Assembly (NCBI RefSeq): GCF_041956535.1
Contig: NW_027192196.1
Location: 266,921 to 330,920, forward strand
DNA: 64,000 bases
Origin: Calcarisporiella thermophila CBS 279.70
Lineage: Eukaryota; Fungi; Calcarisporiellomycota
Direction of reading: 5' to 3'
Below, piece after piece: positions 14,153 to 17,312 of the stretch. The translations under genes and the position numbers were made by a program. Position 1 is the first letter of the stretch. Each line of letters opens with the position of its first letter. The notes under the pieces were generated by a model. It saw nothing but the letters and a program-made list of their open reading frames with translations. It searched no databases and was not told the DNA's origin.

Positions 14153-15079
14153 CTACAAATACAGTTCGCGTTCTACAACATATCTCGCCACTGGGCCTGG
14201 AAGAATGGCCCTCAACTTTTCAATCCGCTCTTCCTTCGGAAGCACGTCTTGCACTAACTCTCTTGCTCGAGTTGAGCTTAGCAAAGCAAGCTCCTCATGG
14301 ATAGTTAAAGGATGGACCCGTGATCGTACAGCCTTCACTTCTTTGCTTTGGAAGAAAGCCTGTACCTCATTTTCTTCAAATCCAGCTCGGTTAGCACAGA
14401 ATATTTGGGAACTCTTGAAAAATGGGGCCAATTCGGCATGCATGTCGTGATAATAGCGTGGATTAAAGAGTCGTATTGCAGTATCAAAGCCAACAATAAA
14501 CCAGGGTTCAATGCTCTGATCCTGTTGTGAGGAGGAGCTGGTGAGAGCACGGGCCTTGTCAATAAACCTTGCGAACCGTGTTAATCCAATTCCAATCTCG
14601 ACGCAAGTCTTCTCATTTCGCTGGCTTTTCTCTAATTCATCGGCAATTTCCCCGGCCATAATTTCCATCATTGCCAGTCGATCTCCCAATCCAGCTCCCG
14701 ATCTCTTTTTGTCAGCATTCTGAGTTGCAAGCAAGAGCAAACAAGCATCAAATGGCTGCCCAGCACGGAGGCCTTGTTCAACGGCCGAGAGAAGAAGGTG
14801 TTGGTGGGCACGGGTTGGCGGGTTGAAGCTGCTGTCAAGCACTAAAACTCGATAGGGGCTACCTTTATATTCCAACTTGGATGGGTTGGCTGGAAAATTA
14901 GAGGTGATGTGAGTGGGGGAGGGACTAATTGTTGATATTATTTCAATGTCAGCATCGGAGCGCTCAAATTTCTCTGCCTGGAACTCCAGATCGCGCCAGC
15001 GCTGATAATTAAGAGTGAGAGACGATCGGGAAGGCGTAAGCAATGCAGCTGGACGATATATCTGTGAGAGAACGCTCAT
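14153..15079 (-). CDS. POF1: POF1-like nicotinamide-nucleotide adenylyltransferase (cytidyltransferase-like fold), intronless
   Basis: Motifs VLDSSFNPPTRAH, LLLATQNADK, RLAMM, ARFIDK, FIVGFDTAIRLFNPRYY and LSSTRAR...ELY. Confidence 0.88.
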   Translation of the reverse strand: MSVLSQIYRPAALLTPSRSSLTLNYQRWRDLEFQAEKFERSDADIEIISTISPSPTHITSNFPANPSKLEYKGSPYRVLVLDSSFNPPTRAHQHLLLSAVEQGLRAGQPFDACLLLLATQNADKKRSGAGLGDRLAMMEIMAGEIADELEKSQRNEKTCVEIGIGLTRFARFIDKARALTSSSSQQDQSIEPWFIVGFDTAIRLFNPRYYHDMHAELAPFFKSSQIFCANRAGFEENEVQAFFQSKEVKAVRSRVHPLTIHEELALLSSTRARELVQDVLPKEERIEKLRAILPGPVARYVVERELYL

Positions 15080-15534
15080 ATCGGCCAAATTGGACTTGGG
15101 AAAAAATAAATGGATTTAGAGATAAGAATTCAAAGTCTAAATATACATATTCAAGCGAGCTTAGGCAGAAAAGGCTTAGAAAAAAATAATCAGAGCAAAT
15201 AATTGAGTCTAGCTTAATTTAGGATCATAGGCTTCTCTCACCTAATGGCGCAATAAAAAAACAATAATGAAGGCAATATATTGCAAATGATTGAAAATCA
15301 CGATCGAACACTTCCTGATGTAATTTGTTAACAACATATACTCCGTCCAAGGTGGTGGGACATTATGTTGTACGATATAGAAAGTTTGTAACGTGTAAAG
15401 TAGTGCAGGAATCCATTAGCAATAAACAAGTTGTACGTCATATTATCATACAGGGAGAGAAGCAAAAATCCACAGACAGTGATATAATAGAGCTTTCATA
15501 AATATAATACATTGTATAGGGAGAAGATAAAAGA

Positions 15535-16737
15535 TTAGCTTTGCCTTGCTGCTGCTTTGTCTTCACTACCAGCTGATAGATCCGTGATGAATGAATTGCC
15601 TCTTGCAGGGTTTAATTCCAGAGTGAACCCGTTTCGATTGGGAGTGTAGTCCTCAATCCCTTCCAAAAGCCATCCCATATCTTCGACACTACGCTCTGCT
15701 TTGGAAGCAGCGCGCATGAATAATAATTCCACGCTCATCTCCGTCACTGCAGAGTCTTTAGTGGCTTCTAGCTTGGACTCACAGTAGATATCCTCTGGGA
15801 AGAGTTGTGTATAACTAGAGCAATTCGAGAAAGTTAAGCTTGATAAAATATTTTTAATGAAACGCAGGGGAACTCTAACCTGTTAGTATTCGCATCTTGT
15901 GAGCTTGGAACCTCCTCTTCGTGTTCAAATTGGAGGGAATCTGACAATATTCGAGATGAGGATTTATAATTTGTATTTCGAAATCGCGACCTATGAGAAA
16001 GTGACGACTCCCCGTTATATCGTGAAGAATTATTGATTACTGGACCGGGTGGGCTTGGTGCGCGCCATTCGACTGCATCCTCCTCTTCTTCATCCGATTC
16101 CTCGACAATCACACCCGGAGCATATTTTGACTGTGCTGCCAGCCGCTGCCGTGAGAATTCAGAGTGTGTAAGCGAATGTGAAGCATGTGAGTGTTGAGAG
16201 ATTGCCTTCTGTTTGACGGGCGAATGAGAGCTTGTTGAGTACCCTTGGGAATAGGATCCTTTTGTATTCGAAAATTAATATCGCAATTGTACAAATATTT
16301 GCAAATGGGGACTGAGATTTACCCAAATCATGGCTTGGAAGTACATAGCGCCCCAAAATTTGTAATCTTCCTTCACTCACGGAGTCGGTTATCCAGGAAG
16401 AACGATATATAGTCGTCGAGCCCTGTTCGTATATTCTAGATGCATCACGCGTAAAATTATAATTTTTTTTATTCGATTTTCATGTTGGAAAGATGTACTC
16501 ACGCCTGTGTAACAGGATCATTCTTATCATCGCTGAAAAGGAATTCAACCCGCTCATCATAAGGATCCCTTAGAGTTTTGCCGCCCTCTCTTGCTAAAGT
16601 AGAAATAAATTAGAACAGTAAATTTTGCACGATGAAGATGGTTATCGAGTCTCGTGGTGTTTCATTAACTAACCCCAGCAATCTCTGGAAGTCTGTGGAA
16701 CGCTTCTACTAAACCAGCACTTTAGACCTTGAAACAT
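15535..16737 (-). CDS. TERB2-like protein (telomere repeat-binding bouquet formation protein 2), 308 aa; exons 16737-16674, 16593-16503, 16435-16323, 16258-15880, 15814-15535
   Basis: Four phase-consistent GT-AG introns. N-terminus MFQGLKCWFSRSVPQTSRDCWAREGG...EFLFSDDKNDPVTQAIY...LGRYVLP and C-terminal SVEDMGWLLEGIEDYTPNRNGF resemble the two conserved regions of vertebrate TERB2 as recalled from memory. Confidence 0.7.
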
Positions 16738-17312
16738 AGGACTACGGAGTTTACAGGGATTGGAGGAAACAACAAGAGATTCTATGGAGATATACAATAA
16801 TTCATATATGTGAATTTAAAAATCGTGTTCGAAATCCGTATCGCACTGAGGAGTGAGAAAATTGCATAAGCCACAGCACACGACCTTAATCAAGCATTTA
16901 AGAGAAGAGATATTTGCATGTTAAACTTATGGTTAGCTCCGCTCTCGTGGTTTCGGTATTGCCACACACTATTAAGCGACTTCGTAGTAGCATGGTTTTT
17001 TATGGCATCACTCCGTATGCTGTTTTCAGAAACCGAGGCTTCCAAATAAATCGAGCTGATCGAATGGCTATGAATTGCACCAGAATAATACTACTTGTGA
17101 GTCAAAAGCATTTTTGTGTATAGTTTTCCATCGAATGCAACTGTTATTTTAATCCAAAAGAAAAAGAATATTTATCAAATCAACTTTACTACTATACTAT
17201 TAAATCCCTTCGGATTAATGGTAATATAATATATGTGACTGCCTTTTTATCACCTCGCGTGTATTTTACCTTGCTTGCAATAGCACCGTAATTTAAAAGC
17301 TGTTAAAAAGAA

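What the first reader, a model, noticed from the sequence alone, without database searches (positions are those of the whole stretch)
15535..16737. Fungal gene resembling metazoan TERB2 at both conserved ends: possible animal-type meiotic telomere-bouquet (TERB1-TERB2-MAJIN) system in a fungus
Seen: the ORF track shows only fragments, but four phase-consistent introns give a 308-aa protein. Its N-terminus (MFQGLKCWFSRSVPQTSRDCWAREGGKTLRDPYDERVEFLFSDDKNDPVTQAIY...LGRYVLP) parallels human TERB2 as I recall it (MFQGQRGWFCGSVSQDLRQFWVAEGG..SDP..ADFLFSCDASHPDTLRIY...LGHFILP), the BRCT-like TERB1-binding domain. After a disordered S/E-rich linker, SVEDMGWLLEGIEDYTPNRNGF parallels the recalled MAJIN-binding segment SIDAMKKFLGELHDFIPGTSGY. 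Established: TERB1-TERB2-MAJIN tethers meiotic telomeres to the nuclear envelope and is generally described as metazoan, while model yeasts use unrelated Bqt1-4 or Ndj1. Inference: the complex may date to the opisthokont ancestor and have been lost in yeasts. Retention of the MAJIN-binding motif predicts fungal MAJIN and TERB1 partners, and implies meiosis in this organism.
Basis: partly seen in the sequence, partly recalled or inferred. Interest (0 to 1): 0.88.

Follow-up and report, generated by a model that had tools for sequence, protein, structure and literature searches.

The report
Fungal orthologue of animal TERB2
An early-branching, heat-loving fungus carries a true single-copy version of TERB2, a linker protein that ties chromosome ends to the nuclear membrane during animal meiosis and that the reviews I could read (up to 2026) describe only from animals, so at least this part of the machinery is older than animals, although its two partner proteins were not found.

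Summary
The five-exon, 308-aa gene is real. It is VTP21DRAFT_9822 of Calcarisporiella thermophila, named 'uncharacterized' in NCBI, and that annotation has the same model. Its N-terminal domain is TERB2: Pfam TERB2 52 bits (cut-off 27) against BRCT_2 20 bits, sole PDB hit 6J07_A, top Atlas structure match TERB2, and 55 bits from an animal-only HMM. Introns 1 and 2 sit at exactly the codons and phases of animal TERB2 introns, which points to vertical descent. Residues 256-282 match the MAJIN-binding motif (1-4 of 3000 shuffles), keeping equivalents of D191, F192, P194 and Y199; library-wide HMM searches miss it. Rap1 is a separate gene. Not shown: TERB1 and MAJIN were not found (low-power searches), there are no expression data, the TERB1-contact loop is five residues shorter, and Y176 is not kept. 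No searchable paper reports fungal TERB2, though the automatic Pfam label already exists. Verdict: a real TERB2 orthologue outside animals (about 0.88); a full fungal TERB1-TERB2-MAJIN complex remains a prediction. The scan had not noted TERB2 on other DNA of this genome.

The parts
16674..16737 (-). Exon 1 (residues 1-21 + 1 nt): first strand and helix of the TERB2 N-terminal domain
   Evidence: alone hits Pfam TERB2 positions 1-20, the only family hit; top window ORF for an animal-only HMM
16594..16673 (-). Intron 1 (80 nt, phase 1, after Trp21); same codon and phase as in animal TERB2 genes
   Evidence: L148 genomic versus L087 spliced; L081, L084, L108, L142, L158, L159
16503..16593 (-). 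Exon 2 (residues 22-52)
16436..16502 (-). Intron 2 (67 nt, phase 2, in codon 52); same codon and phase as in animal TERB2 genes
   Evidence: L081, L084, L125, L142, L159; spliced L087
16323..16435 (-). Exon 3 (residues 53-89): rest of the N-terminal domain, with Tyr54, the BRCT-type Trp66 and the G-x-Y-V-L-P end motif
   Evidence: alone hits TERB2 positions 55-90 and BRCT_2
16259..16322 (-). Intron 3 (64 nt, phase 1); same phase as the animal intron, two codons earlier
15880..16258 (-). Exon 4 (residues 90-216): Ser-rich low-complexity linker (23% Ser, 10% Glu), probably disordered
   Evidence: no Pfam family
15815..15879 (-). Intron 4 (65 nt, phase 2); no animal counterpart could be compared
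15535..15814 (-). Exon 5 (residues 216-308 + stop)
15616..15696 (-). Residues 256-282: MAJIN-binding-motif-like segment; D271, Y272, P274, F279 match human D191, F192, P194, Y199 in spacing

Best explanation
The gene is the fungal orthologue of animal TERB2, inherited vertically from the common ancestor of fungi and animals. SHOWN: a BRCT-fold TERB2 N-terminal domain, a low-complexity linker and a C-terminal MAJIN-binding-type motif in the animal order; two introns at exactly the animal positions; a single copy. INFERRED mechanism: as in mice, it is a two-ended bridge. The N-terminal domain binds a telomere-side partner (TERB1 or a replacement, recruited by a Taz1/TRF-like Myb protein). The C-terminal peptide wraps round a MAJIN-like beta-grasp domain anchored in the inner nuclear membrane, using D271/Y272/P274/F279. 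This tethers telomeres to the envelope in meiotic prophase. Probabilities: orthology about 0.88; a MAJIN-like partner exists about 0.65; a recognisable TERB1 with the animal interface about 0.4; a meiotic telomere role about 0.6.
For: Pfam TERB2 52 bits, E 1e-13, against BRCT_2 20 bits. Sole PDB hit 6J07_A, TERB2 N-terminal domain, E 1e-4. Best Atlas structure match TERB2, TM 0.74. An HMM of animal TERB2 only gives 54.8 bits, ranks exons 1 and 3 first among 10,813 frames and does not pick the Rap1 BRCT. The profile search returned only TERB2-family proteins plus one unnamed look-alike. Introns 1 and 2 coincide exactly with animal introns (chance 2e-4, or 6e-3 if only one site in five is usable). 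The C-terminal motif is picked by vertebrate (4/3000 shuffles) and coral-like (1/3000) profiles, and scores as well as the coral-like TERB2 does against the vertebrate profile. MAFFT and BLASTP align it unprompted. The structure-defined contact residues are kept in spacing. Single copy. A separate Rap1 gene and a telobox-type Myb gene are present. Neighbours and 64-80 nt introns are fungal in type.
Against: No MAJIN or TERB1 found, though these searches are weak. The loop carrying human D55/Y56/E58/D59, which contacts TERB1, is five residues shorter, and the single Tyr54 can align to human Y51 or Y56. Y176 (MAJIN dimer contact) is E256. The F/YxLxP motif reads YVLPS, although the coral-like protein lacks it too. 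A local HMM from vertebrate motifs alone does not score the C-terminal motif above shuffles (600/3000). Only one fungal genome was examined. No RNA data. The tree was unresolved. Both AlphaFold2 models failed (pLDDT 37).
Confidence: 0.72

Rival explanations
1. True TERB2 orthologue but with changed partners or role: TERB1 (and perhaps MAJIN) were lost or replaced, and the protein works as a BRCT-type adaptor at telomeres or in DNA repair, possibly outside meiosis.
For: Partners not found. TERB1-contact loop shortened. The canonical BRCT Trp is kept where vertebrates have lost it. A fungal-looking relative, P0057, has the domain but no detectable MAJIN-binding motif, and Basidiomycota BRCT clusters are the nearest Atlas feature hits.
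Against: A motif whose only known role is to fold around MAJIN is kept in the right place, with four contact residues. The partner searches could not even find this TERB2 gene.
Confidence: 0.17
2. A fungal BRCT-domain protein from a sister family of TERB2 (a paralogue older than the animal-fungal split), whose C-terminal likeness is chance.
For: Weak BRCT_2 hit. Atlas feature scores for Basidiomycota BRCT clusters (0.88, 0.87) equal that for TERB2 (0.87), all under 0.9. P0002 is about as close to P0057 (45 bits) as to coral-like TERB2 (43 bits). Tree unresolved.
Against: TERB2 score exceeds BRCT by 30 bits. Two exact shared introns. C-terminal motif at about p = 0.001 from two different animal profiles. 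No second TERB2-like gene in the genome.
Confidence: 0.09
3. Contamination, or recent horizontal transfer from an animal.
For: No close fungal homologue was recovered.
Against: It lies on a 1.27-Mb contig among fungal-type genes. Introns are 64-80 nt, whereas the second intron of coral-like loci runs to kilobases. Only 28-39% identity to any animal copy, on a long branch nested in no animal group.
Confidence: 0.02

Closest known systems
Metazoan TERB2 (C15orf43; Pfam PF15101; PDB 6J07, 6GNX)
   Same: N-terminal domain sequence and predicted fold; domain-linker-motif order; MAJIN-binding motif with D, aromatic, P, aromatic at human 191/192/194/199 spacing; introns 1 and 2; single copy.
   Different: Longer Ser-rich linker (308 aa, against about 225 in birds and 341 in the coral-like protein); five-residue deletion in the TERB1-contact loop; no Y176 equivalent; YxLxS instead of F/YxLxP; keeps the BRCT Trp; acidic rather than basic C-terminal tail; partners unproven.
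BRCT-domain proteins (PF16589 BRCT_2, PF00533), including fungal Rap1, XRCC1 and DNA ligase 4
   Same: Same fold (Atlas TM 0.61-0.71) and a weak BRCT_2 match.
   Different: Scores 30 bits lower than TERB2; no Myb, ligase or other partner domain; Rap1 is encoded elsewhere (L071) and gives no TERB2 match.
Fission yeast Bqt1-4 and budding yeast Ndj1 telomere-envelope adaptors
   Same: Inferred role only.
   Different: No Pfam match to them; PMC7227075 reports no similarity between them and the mouse proteins.
Animal-type pathways retained in early-diverging fungi (Fanconi anaemia complex PMC11061109; TORC1 regulators PMC11836306; titles and abstracts seen)
   Same: Same evolutionary pattern: shared with animals, missing from yeasts.
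   Different: This case concerns meiotic telomere attachment, for which I found no such report.

Membership tests
TERB2 | Pfam PF15101 above the curated cut-off | tested here: met
   52 bits against cut-off 27, E 1e-13
TERB2 | N-terminal domain homologous to solved TERB2 NTD | tested here: met
   sole PDB hit 6J07_A; Atlas structure top hit, TM 0.74; own AlphaFold2 models unusable
TERB2 | C-terminal MAJIN-binding motif with D191, F192, P194, Y199 | tested here: met
   D271, Y272, P274, F279; ungapped profiles 0-4/3000 shuffles; weaker with local HMMs and missed by library searches
TERB2 | Y176 at the MAJIN dimer interface | tested here: not met
   E256 at that position; this may alter dimer contacts, not the 1:1 fold
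TERB2 | Tyr56 and acidic cluster D55/E58/D59 that bind TERB1 | tested here: inconclusive
   five-residue deletion; Tyr54 aligns to Y51 or Y56
TERB2 | [quoted passage not shown] | tested here: not met
   YVLPS; the coral-like TERB2 P0008 also lacks it, so it is not strictly universal
TERB2 | Shared gene structure with animal orthologues | tested here: met
   introns 1 and 2 exact, intron 3 same phase and two codons off
TERB2 | Meiosis-specific expression and telomere localisation | not testable with these tools
TERB1-TERB2-MAJIN complex | MAJIN gene (beta-grasp domain plus membrane anchor) in the genome | tested here: inconclusive
   Pfam PF15077 none but the TERB2 control also failed; motif scans at chance level, and most hits could not be opened
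TERB1-TERB2-MAJIN complex | TERB1 gene (ARM repeats, CxxC..CxxH TERB2-binding motif, Myb) | tested here: inconclusive
Rap1 | BRCT followed by Rap1 Myb domain | tested here: not met
   no Myb in P0002; the real Rap1 is at L071

The most novel reading that the evidence does not exclude
The whole TERB1-TERB2-MAJIN telomere tether dates to the fungal-animal ancestor, survives intact in early-diverging fungi (with eroded TERB2-like relatives in mushroom-type fungi), and was replaced by Bqt1-4 and Ndj1 in yeasts; TERB2 itself arose from a BRCT domain, with the fungal protein as the intermediate form. A thermophilic fungus would then offer a stable full complex for structural work.
Probability: 0.42. 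Interest if true: 0.82.

Novelty: new member of a known kind. Interest (0 to 1): 0.66.

Why it matters
Reviews up to August 2026 (PMC13522668, PMC9140367, PMC10679444) treat meiotic telomere adaptors as lineage-specific, with TERB1/2-MAJIN confined to animals and unrelated proteins in yeasts; the one dedicated evolutionary study lists only metazoans (PMC7227075 and its supplement). A fungal TERB2 with both binding ends and animal introns moves the origin back at least to the opisthokont ancestor and suggests that the yeast systems are replacements. It gives a concrete bait for finding MAJIN and TERB1 outside animals, links the TERB2 domain to the BRCT fold (no paper in the library holds both terms), and offers a thermophile protein for structure work. 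Tempering this: the Pfam label is already attached automatically, retention of animal-type genes in early fungi is a familiar pattern, and the partners are not shown.

Tried and rejected
Exon-wise PDB searches found nothing useful. Single-sequence homologue searches returned only the protein itself; the exon-5 exhaustive search gave it plus three unrelated repeat proteins. The search for related loci in metagenomes found nothing. Both AlphaFold2 jobs failed without a deep alignment, so I ran no fold search on them. Pfam searches of the own genome for TERB2 and MAJIN were both blank, so that negative means nothing; my guess at a TERB1 Pfam accession was wrong. Parts of those motif patterns came from my memory of the animal proteins and are leads only. 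The tree was unresolved. An Ndt80-type site at 17112-17118 is not above chance. Rap1, contamination and recent transfer were rejected as above. Following the operators' notes: I searched the model exon by exon by reference and left out joining the exons myself; the full-length protein used later (P0002) is a database record returned. No contig taken for human was used: the metagenome pattern was written to exclude the human codon at position 11, and L142 matches bird TERB2.

Full report
Observation. The region holds a minus-strand gene of five exons (16737-16674, 16593-16503, 16435-16323, 16258-15880, 15814-15535). The four GT-AG introns are 80, 67, 64 and 65 nt, and the coding length is 927 nt, or 308 residues plus stop. 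I searched the exons one by one. Exon 1 alone hit only Pfam TERB2 (positions 1-20, E 0.12); exon 3 hit TERB2 55-90 (E 0.15) and BRCT_2 (E 0.036); the TERB2 hits are in the expected register. Exon 5 retrieved a 308-aa database protein, P0002, that contains every exon translation in order. It is VTP21DRAFT_9822 of Calcarisporiella thermophila, named 'uncharacterized', with Pfam PF15101 already precomputed.

N-terminal domain. P0002 scores 52 bits against Pfam TERB2 (cut-off 27, E 1e-13) and 20 bits against BRCT_2. Its only PDB relative by sequence is 6J07_A, the TERB2 N-terminal domain. The Atlas's own model of the protein matches TERB2 best (TM 0.74), then ordinary BRCT proteins (0.61-0.71); by features the nearest clusters are two from Basidiomycota and then TERB2, all under 0.9. 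A degenerate DNA pattern for exon 1, scanned over metagenomes, fetched real animal TERB2 loci: coral-like, bird-like and other invertebrate (the taxa are my inference from sequence likeness). A profile built from these and P0002 returned 57 proteins, all TERB2-family except one unnamed look-alike. An HMM from animal sequences only gives P0002 54.8 bits and ranks its exons 1 and 3 first among 10,813 reading frames, without picking the Rap1 BRCT. Rap1 is a separate gene in this genome, and the domain is single-copy.

Gene structure. Intron 1 follows Trp21 plus one base in the fungus and in the animal loci, as the coral-like spliced and genomic pair L087/L148 shows. Intron 2 falls in phase 2 of the codon before the conserved Ile in both. 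Intron 3 has the same phase and lies two codons earlier. Two exact coincidences among three have a chance of 2e-4, or 6e-3 if only one site in five is usable. With fungal-type neighbours, short introns and 28-39% identity to animal copies, this points to vertical descent rather than contamination or recent transfer. The tree was unresolved and adds only that the protein is not nested in the vertebrate or coral-like groups.

C-terminal motif. The MAJIN-TERB2 structure paper names D191, F192, P194 and Y199 as key contacts, and Y176 at the dimer interface (PMC6297230); F192R abolishes binding (PMC6361898). The fungal protein has D271, Y272, P274 and F279 in the same spacing, once, which 0.2-0.4% of shuffles give; Y176 corresponds to E256. 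An ungapped profile of vertebrate motifs picks residues 256-282 as its best window (4/3000 shuffles) and scores it as high as the coral-like TERB2 motif (26.9 against 25.4). A coral-based profile gives 1/3000 and the mix 0/3000. MAFFT and BLASTP align it to the coral-like motif unprompted. Local HMMs are less clear: 2/3000 with all animals, 600/3000 with vertebrates alone. Pfam and PDB searches miss it. I judge the motif real but only moderately supported.

Differences. The loop that carries human D55, Y56, E58 and D59, which grip TERB1, is five residues shorter. The single Tyr54 aligns to Y51 in one alignment and to Y56 in others. The F/YxLxP motif reads YVLPS, but the coral-like protein lacks it too. 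The fungal domain keeps the BRCT-type Trp66 that vertebrates lack; reading this as an intermediate between BRCT and animal TERB2 is my inference.

Partners. MAJIN and TERB1 were not found. The Pfam MAJIN search of the genome was blank, but so was the TERB2 control. Motif scans were at chance level, and the loci opened were unrelated. Twenty single-Myb loci gave Rap1 and a telobox-type, Taz1/TRF-like gene (the latter judged by eye) but no ARM-Myb gene. These negatives are weak. First-stage notes mention SPO11, MND1, MSH4, MCMDC2-like, SPATA22-like and KASH-like genes in this genome; I did not check them.

Mechanism. Most likely the protein is a two-ended bridge as in mice: the N-terminal domain holds a telomere-side partner, the C-terminal peptide folds round a MAJIN-like membrane protein, and the linker spans between them. 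The domain, the motif and the descent are shown; partners, timing and location are inferred.

Literature. The dedicated study found homologues 'mainly in metazoans' and lists only animals in Tables S1-S4 (PMC7227075). Reviews of 2022, 2023 and 2026 repeat this. Ten searches found no paper reporting fungal TERB2 and none holding both TERB2 and BRCT, but subscription journals are mostly not covered and the 2025 JCB review was not held.

Verdict. A real TERB2 orthologue outside animals, already flagged by automatic Pfam annotation but apparently not discussed. It is a new member of a known kind that extends the family's age; interest 0.66, rising to about 0.82 if MAJIN and TERB1 are found.

Noticed in passing
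P0057 / L174:155-1024 (JGI sample 3300030560): 289-aa unnamed protein with a TERB2-like N-terminal domain below the Pfam cut-off (18 bits), 33% identical to P0002 and sharing its WITDSV stretch, but with no detectable MAJIN-binding motif. It looks fungal; with the two Basidiomycota Atlas clusters it hints at a wider, eroded TERB2-like family in fungi.
   Followed up: partly
L071:4062-5599 (+), G000:C4 near 347 kb: Rap1 gene: Rap1 Myb above cut-off, weak BRCT upstream.
   Followed up: partly
L073:875-2959 (-), G000:C5 near 1.19 Mb: Gene with a C-terminal telobox-type Myb and a helical N-terminal part with no Pfam match; Taz1/TRF-like by eye.
   Followed up: partly
L083:3687-3989 (-), soil metagenome: Intronless TERB2-like N-terminal domain alone (about 100 aa, 26 bits) between animal-type FERM and Na/K-ATPase-beta-like genes; perhaps a truncated or retroposed copy in a soil animal.
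   Followed up: partly
window 14153-15088 (-): Single long ORF directly downstream with no Pfam match at E 0.001; it reads like a nucleotidyltransferase (NMNAT/Pof1-like) by eye.
   Followed up: no
window 17112-17118 (-): Ndt80/MSE-type core 375 nt upstream of the start codon; such sites are not above chance in this window.
   Followed up: yes
PDB 6J07_A / Pfam PF15101: The TERB2 N-terminal domain appears to be a derived BRCT fold; no paper in the searchable library holds both terms.
   Followed up: partly
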